Positions 25,937 to 63,650 of a DNA stretch of 64,000 nt are shown here, one piece after another. The stretch is from Amphiscolops sp. MND2022 (Eukaryota). The stretch covers positions 34,844,001-34,908,000 of the forward strand of contig OZ076409.1 in assembly GCA_964187785.1 (NCBI GenBank), written 5' to 3'. The notes beneath the pieces are model-generated. The model made no database searches, had not been told where the DNA came from, and worked only from the letters and a program-made list of their open reading frames with translations. A program made the translations under genes and the position numbers. How positions within the stretch are numbered: the first letter of the stretch is position 1; every line of letters begins with the position of its first letter.

Positions 25937-28900
25937 CAAGACGCCCGCTGAGCAGCGAGATATTTACCGCCCCAAATTGTTCTAAAACTAAATAAACTTG
26001 AGGCTCAAGAATAGCCGATGCACTATAAAATCGCAAAGAAGCTCGAAGCAAGGAAAGCTTTGATTAATTTGGTCAAAGAGTTCCCCGTTGATTTGATAGC
26101 TGATTTCGGGTTGAGAAAAGTAGTTTTGCGAGCTGAAAGTTGTTTCGCCATCATAGAATTTCACCGGAAAAAAATCAAAAATTTATATTTTTTGTGATTC
26201 CTTTTGGGCAAAATGAGGGTTCCTAGTTTAGGGCGTATGTCTTGAGGTAATGTTTGGCACTGGGAAATGGGTAAAAGCTTGAGACTAGGTCCCTTGGAAA
26301 TTTAGGAAAGTTGAGCGATCCCGGTTTGTTATATTATTGCACATAGTTTAGCCAGAAGTGTCAAAACTTGGAAATCGTTTTGTCAAGGTTGAGGTCAATT
26401 TGAGGAACTTTTCTAACATAAATCTACAGATATTTCTTCATAATTAATCCTACTGGACACCTAGTTTAGCTGTTGTTGAAAGTGTACACCATTCTAACTC
26501 ACGACGTAATTCGAATCATCTTCCTTTGGAAGGCGTACCCCATATCTAGTGATTTTGCTTGGAGGGTATTGAGTATTAAATATTAGGTAAACGAGGTCGA
26601 AATTTACGCTTTCAAGTAAAGTTTTTGAAAGTAGGGCAAACAAATTTGTCTGATATCTTTTCGAAACACTACCCGTAGCTACACGTTTCAATCCTGGGCT
26701 ATTGATATTTCTTGATTGAAGTAAATTTTCGGAAAGGGTCCAAAATTGGGACTGTGTTGTAGAAAATAAGGAAGTTTCGGAAACTTTGACACCTTTGTTG
26801 TAAACTCGATGAACTTCATCCCACTTTTTTCCTAATTGCGTGTTGAATGCCCTATTGTTTTAACGCTCAAGTCTTTGGAAGAAGTTGTATTCTTCAAAAA
26901 CATTTGTGGTTTGAACAAACATTAAGATTAGTTTGTCAAACAACGTGCTTTTTGTTGTTTCATGGATTTTCAGGTCTTTTGAGGCCAATTCCAATAAAAT
27001 CATGCAGTTATGTTTTCAAATTTGCCTACTGGAGATACCCGAATTAGCCAATGTTGACAGTTTTTTAAACCATTTTATGCAAGGAAGTAGCTCAAAACAT
27101 TTACAAAAAATTGCGTAAAATTGTAAAAAAAACTTGAAATTTCTCAGTTTCTCAAACATTTGGGTCCTTCTGAGGAACGTTTTGGCTTGTTTTGAAAAAA
27201 CGTGCGTCTGACCTAGTTTTATCATCAGGAGCCGTTCGAAGCAATTATTTTACCAAAGTTTTCCAATTTCAAAAAATTCCCTGAAAGTATCTGCAATCGA
27301 CAAAATTTCAACTTTTTCGACTTTTTGCGGTCAATTTTGAGCCATTCTTCGACTGAAGTCTGCACGTACTTCTAGATTATCAAGCCTACTAGATTATGAG
27401 TTCAGTCTTTGTTGAACGTTCGCTGACATTTTGACTCCAAAACGATTCAAAAAGTACAAAAGTTGCACAAAACCGAAGATGTTGAAATTTTTCGACTCCT
27501 TTGGATTCATTCTAAAGTGTTTTTGAAGAACAACGCTGCAACAATGTCTTCAAAAAATGTAATGCAAAGCTCGTGCTTTCGTTGTTGAGTTGATTGTGTG
27601 GGAACTTAGAACGAAATCTCTCGAAAAAAGTACAGCAATTGCATCAAAAACGACAAAAACAGTCACATTTTTCACAGTTCAGGGTCAATTTGAGGCATTT
27701 TTCTAGTTCAAGGTGAACTTATCTCTTGACGAAAGCACACCGATACAACAATGCTCCAGGCGTTTTAACATTCTAATCCACGAAGTCTATCGATATTTTG
27801 ACAAAAATTGACCAAAAATAGTGATAAACGGAAAATTTTCGAAATTTTGTCTTTTTCGATGTCAATTCTGGACAATTTCATCTATTTTCTAAGCATACTG
27901 GACAACATATTCTTTCCATGTTGACCCTTTCCAACGTTCCAGTTGACGAAATATGTCAAACATTTGAAAAAGTGCATAAAATCTTTGAAAATTGAAAAGT
28001 TTGATGTTTTTGTCATTTTCGTTGGCAATTTGAAACATTTGCATTCAGAACATTGCAATTATCTCTTCAAAAAAGACTACTGGACAACCAACGTTTTCCC
28101 TGTTGACCCTTTGAAACATTCCAATCACGAATTCTGTCAAAGAATGCATAAATTCTTTGAAAATTGAAAATTTTGGGTTTTTTGTCATTTTCTGTATCAA
28201 TTTGAGACATTTTCTCTCAAAAACTGCACTAAACTCTTTGGAAAAGGCTACTGGACAACACAATCCTTGTTTGTTGACTCTTTCCAGCGTTGAAAGTCAC
28301 GAAGTCAGTCCAAACTTTAACAAAAATACACAAAATCTTTGAAAATAAGAAACTTTTGGATTTTTGTCATTTTCGGTGTCAATTTGAGACTTTTTCACTG
28401 AAAAAATTTGAAGAAACTCTTCGGAAAAGACTACTGGACAACACACTTTTTCGTTGTTGACCCTTTTCAACGTTCCAATCCACAATGTCTGTCAAAAGTT
28501 TGGAAACAAATTGCATAAACTCTTTGAAAAATGGTAATTTTTGATGTTTTTGTCATTTTCGGTGCCAATTTGAGATTTTTTCATATAAAAAACAGCTATT
28601 ATCTCTTCAAAATGCTTCCTGGATAACAAATTAGTGCCATGTTAAATACTGCATAAAAACGTTAAAAATCGGGAATTTTTTAGTTTTTTTCATTTTGGGT
28701 CTCTTTCTTTCCAAAAAAAACACATTTAACTTTTACTGAACAACTACTGGACAACCAATTCTGGCTTTGTTGGATCTTTTCAACAATCTAATCTACAACA
28801 TCTATCTAAAAAATGACAAAAATTGCAATAAAACGTTAAAAATGGGAAGTTTTTGCAGTTTTTACTTATTTTTGGGGTGATTTTAGGGTCATTCTGGGGT

Positions 28901-34894: not shown

Positions 34895-35025
34895 GATGTC
34901 ATCCAAGAAACCAGCCGCTCTGGCTATTTCCCACCCGACCTGACACCCTTGATGTTGGCGGCACACCACAACAACTACCAGATGATTAATCTGCTGTTCA
35001 AGCACGGGGCCAAAAAGATCCAAAG
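34895..35025 (+). CDS. TRPC: TRPC-like channel exon (last ankyrin repeat)
   Basis: TTTTAG acceptor. Encodes DVIQETSRSGYFPPDLTPLMLAAHHNNYQMINLLFKHGAKKIQ, matching the TRPC F.PDITP..LAAH.N.YE...LL..GA motif. Phase-2 donor AG|GTTAAT. Confidence 0.9.
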
Positions 35026-35309
35026 GTTAATGTCAGTCTTTTTCCTCTTACTTTGCGTTCTTCATTACCCACCTTATTCTTCTACCAATATCCAGTAGAC
35101 ACTCAATTATCAGAAATATAATCAGGATTTTAGTTGTTCCGAAAAAAGTCAAAAGCGTTCAAGCCCAAAATTTAACAATGAGGCTAATCAAAATGAATGG
35201 TTCAATAAAACACAAATTTGACTTGACAACATATTCTTTGAACTATTTCTCAGTTGGGTATCAAATAGTTTTTTTTGTATGAAGACTGAATAGTTCGAAA
35301 TATTTCCAG

Positions 35310-35399
35310 CAAGTTATATCAGTTTGAAAATGTTTTCCAGGGTACTCAGTGCTTAAGCACTGAGTACCCTGGAAAACATTTTCAAACTGATATAACTTG
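35310..35399. repeat. 90-bp perfect spacer-free palindrome centred on CTTAAG
   Basis: CAAGTTATATCAGTTTGAAAATGTTTTCCAGGGTACTCAGTGCTT|AAGCACTGAGTACCCTGGAAAACATTTTCAAACTGATATAACTTG. Confidence 0.95.
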
Positions 35400-36188
35400 T
35401 TTTCTCGGCTGTTGACCAGCGGCCCGCTTGTTGCCCTCTCAGAGACTACCGATGCTACCTCGGTAGCCCATCGGTAGAATTTTGGTGAATTATCAGTGAC
35501 CACCGGAAGATTACGATTAATTGCCGACCCAATGTGAAATCTTTTGTGATTCTAGACGTCAATTTTGCATTTTTCTGAAAACTTTGATAAAACTCTTGGC
35601 AAGATGATTATCAAGAGCGCCAAAAATATGTACGATCTCGCAAGATCTTGCCAACAGTTTCAAGAGAAAACCTAACAAATGTGAATGAAAATTGAAAAAA
35701 AAACTGAAGCAGAATAAAAATCGTCTCGAAGGTTTCAAGAGGAGTGACAGGAAACATGTAAGAATACGTTGGCAAGAATTTCAGGATAAAAATTTTTATC
35801 CTGAAATTCTTGCCAACGTATTCTTACATGTTCCCGGTCACTCCTCTTGAAACCTTCGAGACGATTTTTAATCTGCTTCAGTTTTTTTTTTCAATTTTCA
35901 TTCACATTTGTTAGGTTTTCTCTTGAAACTGTTGGCAAGATCTTGCGAGATCGTACATATTTTTGGCGCTCTTGATAATCATCTTGCCAAGAGTTTTATC
36001 AAAGTTTTCAGAAAAATGCAAAATTGACGTCTAGAATCACAAAAGATTTCACATTGGGTCGGCAATTAATCGTAATCTTCCGGTGGTCACTGATAATTCA
36101 CCAAAATTCTACCGATGGGCTACCGAGGTAGCATCGGTAGTCTCTGAGAGGGCAACGAGCGGGCCGCCGGTCAACAGCCCAGAAAACA
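35398..36188. repeat. ~790-bp spacer-free palindrome (arms about 395 bp, about 98% identical)
   Basis: Centre GGATAAAAA|TTTTTATCC at 35792/35793. The arms differ by about 6 substitutions and one homopolymer indel (A9 vs T10). Confidence 0.95.
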
Positions 36189-36909
36189 TTGCAAGTTCTG
36201 CAAGAAAAGTGTCAGCACAAGTTGAAACCAAACTTTTCACAAAAACTGTTATTCTTCAATTATTCGATGAAAGATTTTTACAGCTTTTTCTATTGAGATG
36301 TTGATGATTAAGCACATTCACCGGATTGGCCTGATGAATTTTTTTCAAACATACTGTTTCCATTGTTGCAAAATTTACAATGGTTGAAATAAGACTTCTG
36401 CATAGGTTTGATTGCGTTACAAAGTTTGTAAATTTCTGAAAACTTTGCTGGAACTATCGATTTCTCAAATTTAGTTGGAACAAGAGGGCACCGTATGAAA
36501 TCGGCACCCCACTTAAAGCTCAAAAGCACAAAGTCTCACTGAAATACTTAGTGTGGCTTTTAGAAATTTTTACATCTTTCACAGTGGCAAAAATATAAAA
36601 AACGGAATCTATAGCCTCGAAAACGCTTTTTGTCTCTGGCAAAGCTTTAAGAAAGACCCCAATTAGTGATTTTTTTCGAAAAAAATGCACAGTGCCAAAA
36701 AACCCAAAGATGGGCTTCTAGAAATTGACACAGAAGGGAACCCGTTGGTGAAATAATATAAATTTTCGATAAAACGTACAACGTGGAAAAACCCCAAAGG
36801 ACGGAACCCTTTGAGACGCCAAGGTTTGCAAACAGAGATTTCACTTCCTCGTTGTGCATCGAACCTGCGACCGTCTGTTTGGGCTATTGGTGACGTGAAC
36901 AAGTTCTGT

Positions 36910-37109
36910 NNNNNNNNNNNNNNNNNNNNNNNNNNNNNNNNNNNNNNNNNNNNNNNNNNNNNNNNNNNNNNNNNNNNNNNNNNNNNNNNNNNNNNNNNNN
37001 NNNNNNNNNNNNNNNNNNNNNNNNNNNNNNNNNNNNNNNNNNNNNNNNNNNNNNNNNNNNNNNNNNNNNNNNNNNNNNNNNNNNNNNNNNNNNNNNNNNN
37101 NNNNNNNNN
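36910..37109. other. Assembly gap (200 N)
   Basis: Run of exactly 200 N, a fixed length typical of scaffolding joins. Confidence 0.99.
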
Positions 37110-58955: not shown

Positions 58956-59736
58956 GTGAGTAATTCTCGTGTCCTTCTCTTGATTATTTCTGAATCATTT
59001 CTTTGTTCAAGAACAGCATACATCGCGGCCCAGAAATACGAGAAAACAGCTTCAGCAGCGAAAGTAAATCGCAAAATTAGGATATGCCGTTAAAATGGTA
59101 CTTCGGAATAGGATCAAGGTTGAAACTGTCAAACTTTCGCAGGTACAAATGTTGTTAAGGACTTCGGAAGGTAATGTTTTAAAAGTACACATCGGTTACT
59201 GGGTTTTTATCTTTTTTGCTATAAATATTTGTTTTTCGTACAACATTTTTAGACAACAATCATACATTCATGTTAAACATACTTGTATATGACTTGTTTT
59301 CTTAATTTCCACTTATACATGGGAAAATACTAGAATTCCAATTGACACTCAAATTGTGAAAACTATTGCAGAAAACTTGAAGTTTCTTGAGAGTATATTA
59401 TCGAAAATTCGAACGAAGTTTTTTCCCCCGAAATTCATAGAAACGCAAGATTTGTTTCTGAACCTTTCAAAGTTGGCGACCAGAGAAGAATTTTTTTGAA
59501 TATTTTATGCATATCGCACGTGGTCGCCAACTTTAAAAGGTTCTGAAAGAAAACTTGCGTTTCTATGAATTTCGGGGAAATTTTTATACACATTGGTAAA
59601 AAATTACAGTGAAGAATTTCTCCAAAGCAGTGGCATAAGAGCTCACATTTAAATCTCCGTAACATTTGTTTTTGATTCTTCCAAATCTCAAGTCCTTGAA
59701 AAAAGCACGGAAAAATACTCCGAGGTGGCTGGAATT

Positions 59737-60004
59737 CCAACAAGACGTCTTGGATTCACCTGGATTGTGTATCTGCGTTTGAAATCAATTAGGCTACTGC
59801 ATTTCCATACATGGTCAATTTGAACTCTTGTCCTGGTCACAAAAGGTCAATGTCCAAAAAAGTTTGTCTTAAGACAAACTATTTTGGACATTGACCTTTT
59901 GTGGCCAGGACAAGAGTTCAAATTGACCATGTATGGAAATGCTGTAGCCTAATTGATTTGAAACGCAGATACACAATCCAGGTGAATCCAAGACGTCTTG
60001 TTGG
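59737..60004. repeat. 268-bp spacer-free palindrome centred on CTTAAG
   Basis: 134-bp arms with 4 mismatches; centre AGTTTGTCTT|AAGACAAACT at 59870/59871. Confidence 0.95.
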
Positions 60005-60688
60005 TATAGAAAACTATCTAAATTCTGATTCAAAAGTAGAAACAGTCTGTTTTCATTCATTTCTCCTAATAGCAGTTTTCCCAGATTACACACCAAATTA
60101 TGGTAACAAAATATAAACTGTGCTCTGAAAATATATTTTTACTTCATTCATTTACCGGTCAGGAAATTTTTGTAGCATTGCAAAATTTCTCTGGAAGACA
60201 AAAAACGAATACCAAATCTAATTGATCAATGAACCGGACTGAGATTCTTTTTATTTCTCCCTTCGTGAAAATATATAGTTTGCATCAAGGTATATATTCA
60301 CAAAGCGACAGTACGGCACCGCAGTGTTTCACATTTGTAGAAAAACAAAAGTTGAAAGTTGAAACAAAATGGTATGAAAACAATGGAACATAGAAGCATG
60401 CGCGGAACACAGAAAAACTATATGTGAAAAAGAAATGTGATTCCACCTGTCGAAGTAGAAGCATCGGCGTAATTGAAAAGTTGATGAATTATTGATATAT
60501 GACCTGCTCAGTCGTTTGCACAAAAAAGGGTACTTCTGTGTTATATCCATGTGAGCTGCCAGCCGCAGCCGTGTTGAAGTAGCCAGCTCGAAGATTTAGA
60601 AGCTTCATCAAAATTTAATCACAGTCTTTTTTCTTTATCCACGTTGCGGTCGGCGACGGCGGCCCAAAAACACAACAATTTAAACTCA

Positions 60689-60780
60689 TGTTTTTTGATG
60701 CCTTTGCTCTGAAGACGACCTGTTTACAAGCTTATAAGCTTGTAAACAGGTCGTCTTCAGTGCGAAGGAATCAAAAAACA
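60689..60780. repeat. 92-bp spacer-free palindrome with a 52-bp perfect core
   Basis: Perfect core CTGAAGACGACCTGTTTACAAGCTTA|TAAGCTTGTAAACAGGTCGTCTTCAG (60709-60760); the outer 20 bp have about 4 mismatches. Confidence 0.92.
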
Positions 60781-63476
60781 GGATCTCTTGAACTACGAGT
60801 ATCACCGTACTCAAAAATATCACCGGAACTGCAGAACAATTTTCGTACGGTGATGCTCGTAGTTCAAGAGATGCTCGTTCCAATGTTGGTTTTTAACAGG
60901 TCATGCTGCACCGCTATTTACTATACTGTTTCATTTTATTTTAACATATTTAAAAGGCTTTCGGTTTTCTAAGCTTTTCCCTCACGAGGTGGTAGCATTC
61001 GAATCTTCAAACTGATTGCTCATTATTTCGTTCAAATTGATAATATTCTCGAAACAACCACCAACTACAATTGGCTTTGCTAGCCTTCGTTAGGATGAAA
61101 GCTGAAGAAGAAACTAAAACTTGTCTGCGTATGATCTGTGAAAACGTCCACACACTATTGAGAATTTTCGTAGCCTAATAATTAGTAGGCTTATAACATT
61201 TGATTTGGTACCAATGGTACAACAACAATTCTTCACAAACGCTGACTTTTCTGGTTGGGTCATTTACCTCAGTGTGATAGAGGTATCTAATGATCCCGAT
61301 TTCTTCATGAAATTTGAATTTCCAATTTTTCCATTTTTTCCAGTTTTTGAAGACTTTGCATTGGAAAATTAAGTGAGTGTGTAGGCTTTAAGTACTTTGC
61401 CGATATATTTTCAGCTACTTTTCTGAGCATTTTGCAAGCTTTTCATATTTAATTGGCCGTTCCTTTGAAGTCTTTATATCTTTTGGCACTGGCCACTGAA
61501 TATATCAGTCACATGTAAAAGCAGTGATGAATAAAACATTAGCAGAGTTGAACTATTTTAGAATGCATGAAATGGCCTGTTCCGCAAACTTCAGATGTTT
61601 TTCCATTAATCATCGCTACTTTTCTCGCTGTGGCATTCTATTGAGATGTGCAGTCAATTTTTTTTTGGTTTCAAGAAATTTTTGGTCTTCAATTTTTTAT
61701 TCAATCTCGGAAAATGCAAAACACTTCCTTAAAGTTATTTTCTAATCCTAAGCTGCTTTTTATATGCAGAAGTCTAAACATGAGGCATGATACGAAGAAA
61801 AAGCAGGGAATTTAATTCGATAAAACTTATATGGTTTATGATATACCCCAGAAAGTAAGAATGACAGATCAACCTAAAAATGAGTTGGTAAGGAGTGATT
61901 GTTAATTTCTGCTGAATCTCAAATACGCTCAAACAAATTAGGAACAAAGAAAAAGTTCCATCTAGGGAGGCAACTAAAAACAAAGGCTTGCTTCCGAATA
62001 AGGAGGCCTCAGTAACAAAGAAAGTAAAGAGCCTTGGGTGTCACCAAGGTCGTCGAAGATGGAGAGAGGGAGAATTTTGGAAAATAACGGGAGGATTTTC
62101 CATGGGTTTCCACAGAGGTCCATTCTTTTCCCAACAGCTGCAAAAACAACGAGGGTTCGAGGCTTATTCAACTTGTTTAGACTTCTAAGACCAATCTCAT
62201 AACTAGTTTGTAAACTTCATCTTTCAGCAAAGGCGGTTAGGCAGAGAGTAGGAAATTCAAGCTTCGATGAAGTGAAATTTTTCAGTCATCAAGGAAAAGG
62301 TAACTACTAGATTTCAATAAAACCAATTTCAAGTACTTGTGGTAAATTTACCCGGCTGATTCTGGTACTCATTTTGGTTTCAGTTCAACTTTGCATTAAT
62401 CTTACATTTGCTCTAATAAAAATTAGTATCTGGTTTTCTTTAATTTTTCAAAATTTAACGTTCTCGAACTTCGTGGAGTTATTCCGCAAAAAATCAGTGG
62501 AAATTCTTCGGTCTAATGATTGTGGTTACCTCATCTTCTAGTGAATAAACAAAATACAGGTGTTTCAGTAAATGTGATATTTTTCAAATCGAGATTTCAT
62601 TGTTATCAATTGTGGCATAAAGAGGATAGATGTCAAATCCTCCTAGAAATTCTCATAAGCGCCTTATTAGACTGGTACCTCAACTTAATCATTGATTACC
62701 ATCTGGCGATGATCGGTCTGGTGGAGACTACAAGTACGAAATTGACGACATATGATTTTGCATTCATCAATTCACTATTTTTGGTTGCTTTCTATTCTTT
62801 CAAACTAGACTTAGATAATTGAAATACAACATCAATCTATCAATTTTCAAAATCTGAGGTTTTCAAAATTTAACTCGAGTTAAATTCTGCTTGCGTGATG
62901 TAAGATTTTTAGTTTTCCGGTAGCTTTAACTATTTGTTGAGAATAGCTCCACTACAACTCAATTAAACCCGTAGGTACCATGCACGAGACAAGGACTGGC
63001 TGAGTATCTACATAAATTTTTATTAACTCCGAAGAAGAGACGAATCAACTTAATCGAAGGCGGTGGGGGTAAGTGTGACAAGGAAATCACGATCTTTACA
63101 ACTTTGCTATTTTCCCCTCTGTCAGGGGTTTGTCTCGCTACTCTTGGACTGTTTGAAATTATCTTTTCGCTGATGAAAAGAAGCAGGTTGAACATTAATT
63201 ACTATACATCAAATAAACAAGTCGAGTAATAGACACAAATACAATTTCATATCCACGAATAATAGAATGAATAATATGATAACATCGATAATAGCGGAGA
63301 ATATTACTGAGTAAATTAGGAGGCATATTAGGAGGCATATAACACAAGAGAACAGAATACAAGAATTTCAGCAAGGTTAAGTTTTTTGTATCCGTAAGGA
63401 TGGGGGTGATATCGAAGATATCGGAAGAATCAACTCGCCGCAAAATCTCTATCGGTCTTGGAGTGAAAACAACAAT

Positions 63477-63650
63477 CCGTGTATTATCAGCCCACTTAGG
63501 CATAAACCGTGTATTATCAGCCCACTTAGGCTTAAACCGTGTATTATCAGCCTACTTAGGCTTAAACCGTGTATTATCAGCCCACTTAGGCTCAACCGTG
63601 TATTCTCAGCCCACTTAGGCTCAACCGTGTATTCTCAGCCCACTTAGGCT
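63477..63650. repeat. Minisatellite, 6 copies of a 30/29-bp unit
   Basis: AACCGTGTATTATCAGCCCACTTAGGCTTA. Four 30-bp periods, then 29-bp variants carrying TATTCTCAG. Confidence 0.92.

What the first reader, a model, noticed from the sequence alone, without database searches (positions are those of the whole stretch)
35398..36188. ~790-bp spacer-free palindrome in TRPC intron 2
Seen: about 395-bp arms, no loop, about 7 differences. The arms include pieces of a dispersed repeat (related to 1620-1690) and a nested hairpin CTACCGATG-CTACC-TC-GGTAG-CC-CATCGGTAG, so ordinary genomic sequence was copied in inverted form rather than this being a simple TIR pair. Knowledge: long perfect palindromes extrude cruciforms and are normally unstable; transcribed ones form long dsRNA (ADAR/Dicer substrates). 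Inference: a genuine, aged foldback duplication that is tolerated, 370 bp from an exon. It lies 720 bp from a contig end, so an artefact must be excluded; the arm divergence argues against one.
Basis: partly seen in the sequence, partly recalled or inferred. Interest (0 to 1): 0.7.

Follow-up and report, generated by a model that had tools for sequence, protein, structure and literature searches.

The report
Twin fold-back palindromes in an intron
A 791-bp mirror-image duplication of ordinary intron DNA, touching a second 90-bp one, is really in the sequence and looks like the scar of a broken chromosome whose two ends each copied themselves backwards before rejoining, a scar type that recurs across this genome.

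Summary
Arms 35398-35792 and 35793-36188 (395/396 nt) have no spacer and differ by 6 substitutions and 1 indel.

Both palindromes are single-copy. Only arm positions about 130-307 belong to a dispersed tRNA-SINE family. There are no target-site duplications, so this is not a transposon.

Contigs from three runs of one sample carry both centres, the junction between the two palindromes, and both versions of the outer arm. This rules out a single fold-back read. A second sample shows the small centre and the right arm joined to the right flank. It does not show the large centre or the inter-palindrome junction, so independent confirmation is incomplete.

Similar unique palindromes occur about once per 40 kb in 352 kb sampled. 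Their arm identities run from 100% to 93%, and three are abutting pairs. Earlier notes of this scan report more twins elsewhere in this genome.

Best reading: one double-strand break whose two ends each folded back, were extended, and were joined by microhomology. The scar is probably neutral. Long-read spanning and dsRNA effects remain untested.

The parts
34895..35025 (+). Upstream exon of the host gene (ankyrin repeat of a TRPC-like channel). The donor GT is at 35026.
   Evidence: Translation. Pfam Ank 25.7 bits, above the cut-off. PDB ankyrin hits.
35310..35354 (.). Arm a: left (outer) arm of the small palindrome, inferred to be the original sequence and contiguous with the left flank.
   Evidence: Contigs of all four runs run from the left flank into it.
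35355..35399 (.). Arm a': inverted copy of a, 100% complementary, no spacer, centre GTGCTT|AAGCAC.
   Evidence: The centre is crossed by contigs in both samples (records 2, 10, 18, 29).
35398..35399 (.). TG shared by the end of a' and the start of b: a 2-nt junction microhomology between the two palindromes.
   Evidence: Overlapping arm coordinates; sequence.
35398..35792 (.). Arm b: left (inner) arm of the large palindrome, inferred to be the newly made inverted copy.
   Evidence: The junction contig 35370-35459, carrying the b-specific bases, is present in runs X1-X3 only.
35793..36188 (.). Arm b': right (outer) arm, inferred to be the original and contiguous with the right flank.
   Evidence: Contigs run from 36065, 36109 or 36127 on to 36909 in all four runs. 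In the second sample they carry the b' bases at 36157, 36168 and 36180.
35753..35832 (.). Perfectly symmetrical core around the centre at 35792|35793 (TAAAAA|TTTTTA).
   Evidence: Contigs end at 35807, that is centre + 15, in X1-X3, as expected for 31-mers that fold back on themselves.
35527..35704 (+). 5'-truncated body of a tRNA-derived SINE inside arm b. Its mirror copy lies at about 35881-36059 in b'.
   Evidence: 41 scored genome hits at 78-86% identity covering arm positions 124-313, out of 957 candidates. Alignment A1 shows that other copies continue into a tRNA-like head that is missing here.
35446..35477 (.). Its mirror is at 36109-36140.
   Evidence: Sequence.
36189..36909 (.). Unique right flank up to the assembly gap (200 N at 36910-37109). 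It contains fragments of other dispersed repeats.
   Evidence: It is present at full depth in the second sample.
59734..60007 (.). Another single-copy spacer-free palindrome in the window (137-nt arms, 96% identity).
60686..60872 (.). Another abutting pair: 60686-60783 (49-nt arms, about 92-93% identity, no spacer) touching 60783-60872 (28-nt arms, 34-nt spacer).

Best explanation
This is a germline structural mutation, not an element with a function of its own. The layout is L - a - a' - b - b' - R.

The outer arms a (35310-35354) and b' (35793-36188) are the original intron sequence, each continuous with its flank. The inner 440 bp, a' plus b (35355-35792), are new DNA.

The most likely history (inferred):
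1. One double-strand break fell between a and b'.
2. On each broken end the 3' strand turned back on itself, either by snap-back priming at an AT-rich tip or through a covalently closed hairpin that was later nicked.
3. Each strand was then extended along its own sequence, for 45 nt on the left end and 395 nt on the right end.
4. The two extended ends were joined through a 2-nt microhomology (TG).

This is the topology of synthesis-dependent microhomology-mediated end joining and polymerase-theta-type templated inverted insertions, and of the Pol-delta-dependent fold-back insertions seen in yeast, but with far longer tracts.

The scar sits about 372 bp inside an intron of a TRPC-like gene and is probably neutral. 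If the intron is transcribed it would fold into a roughly 395-bp double-stranded RNA stem (inferred, untested).

What is shown: the structure, its single-copy status, the absence of transposon hallmarks, multi-read support in one sample, which arm is contiguous with which flank, and the recurrence of the pattern.

What is inferred: the break, the fold-back chemistry, that both palindromes arose in one event, and neutrality.
For: - **Geometry.** Two spacer-free palindromes abut with a 2-nt overlap.
- **Single-copy arms.** Apart from an embedded old SINE fragment the arms are single-copy, and both flanks are unique.
- **No transposon hallmarks.** There are no target-site duplications at this palindrome or at the 8 other palindromes checked.
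- **Read support in sample S1.** In three runs, separate contigs carry the a|a' centre, the a'-b junction with the b-type bases, the b|b' centre, and b'-R with the b'-type bases, at word depths 6-37.
- **Second sample (S2).** It carries L-a through the small centre, and b'(35976 onward)-R with the b' bases. The outer arms are therefore the ones tied to the flanks.
- **A recurring class with a range of ages.** In 352 kb sampled I found about 9-12 unique palindromes with arms >= 25 nt. Arm identities are 100, 100, 100, 99, 98, 97, 96, 93 and 93%. No sequencing artefact would produce that spread.
- **Abutting pairs recur.** Three of them are abutting pairs with 1-6 nt overlaps: this one, 60686-60783|60783-60872, and L048 192-498|493-566.
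- **Earlier notes of this scan.** They list three further twins in the same genome.
- **Where the differences lie.** The arm differences cluster towards the two ends of the arm, that is near the a'|b joint and in the inner quarter towards the fold-back point (P about 0.003). This is compatible with low-fidelity repair synthesis.
- **Published precedents for the topology.** Fold-back templated inverted insertions at breaks in yeast (PMC11724301); snap-back SD-MMEJ in Drosophila (PMC2943611, PMC5728401); polymerase theta extension in cis (PMC4912351).
Against: - **No ancestral allele.** No allele with a joined directly to b' was seen in either sample, so the adjacency of a and b' before the event is assumed.
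- **Gaps in the second sample.** It shows no contig over the a'-b junction or over the large centre. Its contig through the small centre has no branch where a' should leave for b. Either that individual lacks the large palindrome, or short weakly covered links were dropped when its contigs were built.
- **Low depth in S1.** Word depth over the palindrome and the right flank is only a third to a half of that of the left flank. This is not fully explained; heterozygosity is likely.
- **Spacer-free centres.** Snap-back priming should leave a loop of a few unpaired bases, yet 5 of the larger palindromes are symmetrical to the last base. That needs either a pre-existing short palindrome at the tip or a covalent hairpin.
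- **Tract length.** The 45-395 nt tracts are an order of magnitude longer than the 5-34 bp reported for yeast.
- **No repair-gene loss.** Ku, Mre11 and CtIP/Sae2 domains are all present in the genome, so no simple gene loss explains the pattern.
Confidence: 0.6

Rival explanations
1. Two separate events rather than one. The 90-bp palindrome arose first and is shared by both samples. As a hairpin-forming fragile site it later provoked a second break at its edge, and repair of that break produced the 791-bp fold-back. The large palindrome would then be younger and polymorphic, which is why it is absent from the second sample.
For: - The second sample has the small centre but not the a'-b junction or the large centre.
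- Another note in this genome describes a palindrome growing out of a pre-existing hairpin with further small fold-backs (s1-152472).
- Palindromes are known break hotspots (reviewed in PMC7999016; listed, not read here).
Against: - The large palindrome has 7 arm differences while the small one has none, which is the opposite of the expected age order. With 45-nt arms, though, zero differences is uninformative.
- In the second sample nothing distinct follows a', which does not fit a simple 'small palindrome only' allele either.
- Pairs with microhomology joints recur, which a single two-ended event explains more economically.
Confidence: 0.17
2. Technical artefact of the assembled sample. Chimeric inverted molecules, made during amplification or library construction, were incorporated near a contig end. 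The true genome would then have only one copy of each arm.
For: - The contig ends 721 bp away.
- All supporting runs come from one sample and one study.
- The other sample lacks the diagnostic junctions.
- Word depth over the structure is lower than on the left flank.
- Whole-genome amplification and nanopore libraries are known to make palindromic reads (PMC6218980, listed; PMC12870357).
Against: - The arms differ at 7 sites (1.8%), several times the roughly 0.4% difference seen between haplotypes or samples in the right flank. Both outer variants are assembled at depth 6-18 in three runs.
- Unique flanks continue on both sides, so the fold-back does not run to a read end or contig end.
- Described fold-back artefacts are read-length and symmetrical about the read midpoint, and were virtually absent from the one PacBio HiFi dataset examined (PMC12870357).
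- The small palindrome's centre is present in the second sample.
- Sister palindromes elsewhere are 3-7% diverged and are not near gaps.
Confidence: 0.15
3. A mobile or functional hairpin element: a foldback transposon or MITE, a transposon-excision footprint with hairpin-derived palindromic additions, or a hairpin-RNA (endo-siRNA) gene.
For: - Long inverted arms without a loop resemble foldback elements and hairpin-RNA loci.
- Palindromic additions on both sides of one break are what hairpin-forming transposases (hAT, Transib, RAG) leave behind.
- The centres of these palindromes are AT-rich.
Against: - The whole arm occurs only here.
- There are no target-site duplications. No shared 8-bp duplicate flanks the supposed excision point: the end of a is CAGTGCTT and the start of b' is TTTTTATC.
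- Excision footprints are a few bp long, not 45-395 nt.
- The arms match no gene. Apart from the SINE there is no possible target.
- Rfam gives only generic hairpin matches far below the gathering scores.
Confidence: 0.04

Closest known systems
Fold-back (snap-back) templated inverted insertions at double-strand breaks: SD-MMEJ, polymerase-theta-mediated end joining, and the Pol-delta-dependent fold-back insertions of yeast (PMC11724301, PMC2943611, PMC5728401, PMC4912351)
   Same: - The inverted copy lies directly next to its own template.
- Local unique sequence is copied.
- The extended end is joined to the other side through a few bases of microhomology.
- No transposon hallmarks.
   Different: - Tracts here are 45-395 nt (up to 187 nt in sister cases), against mostly 5-34 bp.
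- Both ends of the same break carry a fold-back, giving twin palindromes.
- The centres are often symmetrical to the last base instead of keeping a small loop.
- The events are fixed or segregating in a germline genome and are numerous.
- Enzyme dependence is unknown.
Large fold-back inversions / inverted duplications of human disease, cancer and yeast Mre11/Sae2 mutants (PMC3907307, PMC7467729, PMC10622511; seen in the listing only, not read here)
   Same: A hairpin or fold-back intermediate at a resected break produces a head-to-head duplication.
   Different: - Those are kilobases to megabases long and usually keep a spacer set by a pre-existing short inverted repeat.
- They create dicentric or terminally deleted chromosomes.
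- Here the duplication is sub-kilobase and interstitial, and both flanks are retained.
- Mre11 and CtIP/Sae2 domains are present in this genome.
Palindromic (P) nucleotide additions after opening of hairpin-capped ends (V(D)J recombination; hAT/Transib excision footprints). This comparison rests on general knowledge, not on a tool result.
   Same: - Spacer-free palindromes lie on both sides of a single break.
- The original sequence is on the outside and the copy on the inside.
   Different: - P additions are 1-5 nt long.
- Excision footprints keep the target-site duplication, and none is present here.
- No transposon remnant is seen.
Fold-back / palindromic read artefacts of nanopore and whole-genome-amplified libraries (PMC12870357, PMC6218980)
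   Same: Head-to-head inverted sequence, sometimes with nothing between the two halves.
   Different: - The artefacts are read-length, centred on the read midpoint, have identical halves and differ from molecule to molecule.
- Here the arms are 395 nt, differ at 7 sites, have unique flanks on both sides, and are supported at depth in three runs.

Membership tests
Fold-back templated inverted insertion at a double-strand break | The inverted copy lies immediately beside its template, and the copied material is local unique DNA. | tested here: met
   Zero spacer. The arm is single-copy apart from the embedded SINE.
Fold-back templated inverted insertion at a double-strand break | The end of the new tract is joined to the other break end through short microhomology. 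| tested here: met
   There is a 2-nt overlap (TG) at 35398-35399. Sister pairs overlap by 6 nt (L048) and 1 nt (60783). Two nucleotides alone is weak evidence.
Fold-back templated inverted insertion at a double-strand break | An ancestral allele exists that lacks the insertion (a joined to b'). | tested here: inconclusive
   No 35354-to-35793 joint appears in any of the four runs (table 5). No other copy of the locus exists in the assembly. No related genome was available.
Fold-back templated inverted insertion at a double-strand break | A short unpaired loop, or a pre-existing short inverted repeat, lies at the turning point. | tested here: inconclusive
   The centre is fully symmetrical (AAAAA|TTTTT). 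Sister palindromes have spacers of 0, 0, 0, 0, 1, 3, 4 and 25 nt. Without the ancestral sequence, a pre-existing mini-palindrome cannot be told apart from a covalent hairpin.
Fold-back templated inverted insertion at a double-strand break | Dependence on polymerase theta, polymerase delta and end-joining factors. | not testable with these tools
   This needs genetics in the organism.
Foldback transposon / MITE | Multiple copies in the genome. | tested here: not met
   The full arm matches only itself and its partner. Every other hit covers only the SINE part.
Foldback transposon / MITE | Target-site duplication flanking the element. | tested here: not met
   The flanks ...GATATAACT and TTGCAAGTT... 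share no direct repeat.
Long-read or amplification fold-back artefact | The two halves are identical, being copies of one molecule. | tested here: not met
   There are 7 differences. The outer three are assembled separately on each arm in three runs.
Long-read or amplification fold-back artefact | The fold-back runs to the end of the read or contig and has no unique flank beyond the second half. | tested here: not met
   721 bp of unique right flank follow, and the runs' contigs continue about 840 nt beyond the assembly contig end.
Long-read or amplification fold-back artefact | Absent from independent samples and libraries. | tested here: inconclusive
   The second sample lacks the large centre and the a'-b junction but has the small centre. 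Only contigs were available, and the tool itself states that a hole proves nothing.
Hairpin-RNA (endo-siRNA) locus or known structured RNA | Arms homologous to a target gene, or a match to a curated RNA family. | tested here: not met
   There is no genic match for the arms. The best Rfam score is 72 bits against a gathering score of 211.
TRPC channel gene (host gene) | Ankyrin repeats followed by a TRP_2 domain on the same strand. | tested here: inconclusive
   The Ank exon scores above the cut-off. TRP_2 scores 15.9 bits against a cut-off of 27. The transmembrane exons were not examined.

The most novel reading that the evidence does not exclude
In this animal, germline double-strand breaks are often repaired through long fold-back or covalently closed hairpin intermediates on both ends. 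This leaves twin, spacer-free palindromes with arms up to about 400 nt. Extrapolating from roughly 1 per 40 kb in 352 kb sampled, there would be on the order of 25,000 in the 1.07-Gb genome. They then persist until their arms are 7% diverged. Together that would mean a lineage-specific repair signature combined with unusual tolerance of long perfect palindromes, even though Ku, Mre11 and CtIP are present.
Probability: 0.35. Interest if true: 0.75.

Novelty: new variant of a known kind. Interest (0 to 1): 0.5.

Why it matters
Long spacer-free palindromes are normally among the least stable DNA sequences. Fold-back repair products have been studied mostly as very short insertions in reporter assays or as catastrophic rearrangements in tumours.

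A genome in which sub-kilobase twin fold-backs are common, interstitial, heritable and of many ages would offer two things:
- A natural catalogue of one repair outcome, with tract lengths, turning-point sequences and junction microhomologies all readable.
- A test case for how a germline tolerates palindromes.

For this particular locus the practical points are these:
- The structure sits next to an assembly break.
- It may be polymorphic.
- If the intron is transcribed, it would put a roughly 395-bp double-stranded stem into the pre-mRNA of a TRPC-like channel gene.

Tried and rejected
- **Extension of the palindrome into the flanks at lower identity.** Local alignment of the left flank against the reverse complement of the right flank scored no better than shuffles.
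- **Inverted-triplication layout** (b' before a, and a after b'). No such repeats were found.
- **Other copies or haplotigs of the locus in the assembly that might show the ancestral allele.** None exist; both flanks are unique.
- **Known RNA families.** Only generic hairpin matches appeared, far below the gathering scores.
- **Loss of repair genes as an explanation.** Ku is present at two loci, and Mre11 and the CtIP/Sae2 domain are present.
- **Restriction-site or ligation origin of the centres.** CTT|AAG and CTTA|TAAG were considered. The centres do not fit filled-in Hi-C junctions consistently, so I dropped this as untestable here.
- **A wider genome census.** The density estimate therefore rests on 352 kb only.
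- **The joint 35606-to-36065 seen in the second sample and several loose ends.** They lie at the borders of the high-copy SINE and most likely come from other SINE copies, so I did not use them.
- **Word depths from contigs.** I tried to fit them to homozygous and heterozygous models and none fitted cleanly. I draw no zygosity conclusion.
- **RNA evidence.** No RNA run was listed, so transcription, editing and small RNAs were not examined.
- **The N gap.** It was left untouched.

Full report
**1. The observation.**
The region 35398-36188 is a 791-bp palindrome with arms of 395 and 396 nt and nothing between them. As a single DNA strand, 35300-36200 folds at -534 kcal/mol, against -96 for shuffles (z = -78).

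The smaller details also check out:
- The nested hairpin is at 35446-35477.
- The repeat piece related to 1602-1681 is real.
- The upstream exon ends at 35025.
- A 200-N gap begins at 36910.

The palindrome does not continue into the flanks at lower identity.

**2.
A perfect 90-bp palindrome (35310-35399, 45-nt arms) abuts the left arm. The two palindromes share the dinucleotide TG at 35398-35399. The layout is therefore L - a - a' - b - b' - R.

**3. What the arms are made of.**
A search of the whole 1.07-Gb assembly finds the full arm only at this locus, once on each strand. All other hits (957 candidates, 78-86% identity) cover arm positions about 124-313 only. Aligned with eleven of those copies, this stretch is the body of a tRNA-derived SINE. 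The copy in the arm lacks the tRNA-like head.

The arm is thus unique DNA, then an old truncated SINE, then unique DNA. The small palindrome and both flanks are also unique. No direct repeat flanks either palindrome.

**4. Reads.**
Only assembled contigs of four public runs were available. Three runs (X1-X3) are from one sample, S1, and one run (X4) is from a second sample, S2. All belong to one study.

In each of X1-X3:
- A contig runs from the left flank 30 nt into arm a.
- A 60-nt contig runs from the start of a to 15 nt past the small centre.
- A 90-106-nt contig carries the a'-b junction with the three b-specific bases.
- A contig runs along the arm to 15 nt past the large centre.
- A contig carries the b'-specific bases on into the right flank, and about 840 nt beyond the assembly contig end.

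Breaks at exactly these places are what 31-mers give for two true palindromes. Word depths are 6-37. The structure, and the three outer arm differences, are therefore consensus features of many reads and not errors of one fold-back read.

Three cautions apply:
- The three runs are one sample, possibly the assembled one.
- Depth over the palindromes and right flank is only a third to a half of that of the left flank. I could not fit that to a simple zygosity model. The right flank is visibly heterozygous in S1: an alternative contig in X3 differs at 36419, 36598 and 36732.
- Contigs cannot show a single molecule spanning everything.

In S2:
- A contig runs from 35173 through arm a and across the small centre.
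- Contigs cover b' from 35976 into the right flank at full depth, with the b' bases.
- Nothing is laid on 35370-35515 or on 35718-35818.
- The contig through a shows no branch where a' should leave for b.
- S2 also has a second allele that departs from the assembly at 35203.

S2 therefore confirms independently that a spacer-free palindrome centre exists here and that the outer arms are the ones tied to the flanks. It does not confirm the large palindrome. That individual may lack it, or short weakly covered links may have been pruned when its contigs were built. The tool itself warns that a hole proves nothing.

**5. It is one of a class.**
The window holds a further spacer-free palindrome and a further abutting pair:
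- 59734-60007: 137-nt arms, 96% identity, single-copy.
- 60686-60783 (49-nt arms, about 92-93% identity, no spacer), which touches a further inverted repeat at 60783-60872 (28-nt arms, 34-nt spacer).

In 289 kb of other stretches of the genome I found:
- L023 1772-2145: 187-nt arms, 100% identity.
- L004 56-304: 124-nt arms, 1-nt spacer, 100% identity.
- L034 2391-2651: 129-nt arms, 3-nt spacer, 93% identity.
- L043 7290-7345, with L043 7117-7216 only 74 nt from it.
- L048 192-498 (141-nt arms, 25-nt spacer, 99% identity), which abuts L048 493-566 (37-nt arms, no spacer, 97% identity) with a 6-nt overlap.

Shuffled sequence gave none. That is roughly one such palindrome per 40 kb.

Three of them are abutting pairs. 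None has target-site duplications. Their centres are AT-rich (CTT|AAG twice, CTTA|TAAG, ATT|AAT, GTA|TAC, AAAAA|TTTTT). Only the palindrome under study lies near a gap.

Earlier notes of this scan on other parts of the same genome describe three more twins: 422+148 bp, 176+290 bp and 94+372 bp. One follow-up agent also read its pair as a fold-back repair scar. The scan has therefore found this kind of object before on other DNA of this genome. I treat those notes as leads; the pairs cited above are my own.

The spread of arm identities from 100% down to 93% is the strongest argument that the class is biological. No sequencing or assembly artefact produces partly diverged halves.

**6. Mechanism.**
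The arrangement has original arms outside, copies inside, and a microhomology joint between the copies. This is what results if one double-strand break fell between a and b' and each 3' end turned back and was extended along its own strand. The extension was 45 nt on one side and 395 nt on the other. The two new ends then paired through TG and were sealed.

The same topology is documented on a much smaller scale:
- Yeast fold-back templated inverted insertions, mostly 5-34 bp (PMC11724301).
- Snap-back SD-MMEJ in Drosophila (PMC2943611, PMC5728401).
- Polymerase theta extension in cis (PMC4912351).

The arm differences are clustered: three lie in the outermost 32 nt, next to the joint, and four at arm positions 297-355, with a clean run of 264 nt between them (P about 0.003). 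That fits low-fidelity synthesis or later conversion of the middle, so the 1.8% divergence is not a safe clock.

Two features do not fit simple snap-back:
- Many centres are symmetrical to the last base. That needs a pre-existing mini-palindrome at the tip or a covalently closed hairpin that was later nicked off-centre.
- The tracts are ten times longer than the published ones.

I found no loss of Ku, Mre11 or CtIP/Sae2 that could explain a shift in repair. A variant reading, in which the small palindrome came first and its fragility provoked the second event, fits the second sample better but not the recurrence of microhomology-joined pairs. I keep it as the main rival.

**7. Artefact.**
Described fold-back read artefacts are read-length and symmetrical about the read midpoint, and were virtually absent from the one PacBio HiFi dataset examined (PMC12870357). 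Amplification palindromes are also read-scale (PMC6218980, listed).

The structure here has short arms, unique flanks on both sides, 7 arm differences and depth in three runs. I put an artefact at about 15%. That figure stays this high because of the nearby contig end, the single supporting sample and the gaps in S2.

**8. Function.**
Nothing suggests a function. There is no curated RNA family, no gene homology in the arms and no coding potential beyond chance ORFs.

The host gene has an ankyrin-repeat exon just upstream and a weak TRP_2-like exon 14 kb downstream. 'TRPC-like' is plausible, but the intron number is unverified. If transcribed, the intron would contain a stem of about 395 bp. 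Whether that is edited, diced or harmless could not be tested, because no RNA runs were listed.

**9. Verdict.**
- The object is a new variant of a known kind, fold-back break repair. It is of moderate interest as a single locus and of higher interest as a genome-wide pattern.

Noticed in passing
window 59734-60007: Single-copy spacer-free palindrome with 137-nt arms, 96% identity and centre GTCTT|AAGAC. It is not near any gap.
   Followed up: partly
window 60686-60872: Abutting pair: a 98-bp spacer-free palindrome (about 92-93% identity) that touches an inverted repeat with 28-nt arms and a 34-nt spacer.
   Followed up: partly
L048:192-566 (G000:C7, near 40.0 Mb): Abutting pair: 141-nt arms (25-nt spacer, 99% identity) overlapping by 6 nt (AAACCA) with a palindrome of 37-nt arms and no spacer.
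   Followed up: partly
L023:1772-2145 and L004:56-304: Perfect palindromes with 187-nt and 124-nt arms. The L023 palindrome starts inside the end of a SINE copy.
   Followed up: no
window 35203 (run X4): The second sample carries an allele that departs from the assembly at 35203, about 107 bp before the small palindrome. Word depth is about 91 before this point and about 41 after it. What the other allele contains is unknown.
   Followed up: no
window 36189-36909: The right flank is heterozygous in the main sample: the alternative contig has A>C at 36419 and 36598 and a 2-nt deletion at 36732. The runs' contigs continue about 840 nt past the assembly contig end into the gap. I did not read or use that sequence.
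   Followed up: no
window 59423-59580: Inverted repeat with 60-nt arms (92% identity) and a 38-nt spacer, possibly a MITE. Its copy number was not checked.
   Followed up: no
L019:1836-1930 and L028:1836-1930: The same inverted repeat (46-nt arms, 3-nt spacer) sits at the same offset from the SINE in two different loci, so this one belongs to a repeated element and not to the unique-palindrome class.
   Followed up: no
window 63444-63593 and 27891-28870: Two tandem arrays. The first has a 30-bp unit, with copies 93-95% identical. The second has a unit of about 180 bp and lies inside the region another note calls a Helitron/Helentron-like element.
   Followed up: no
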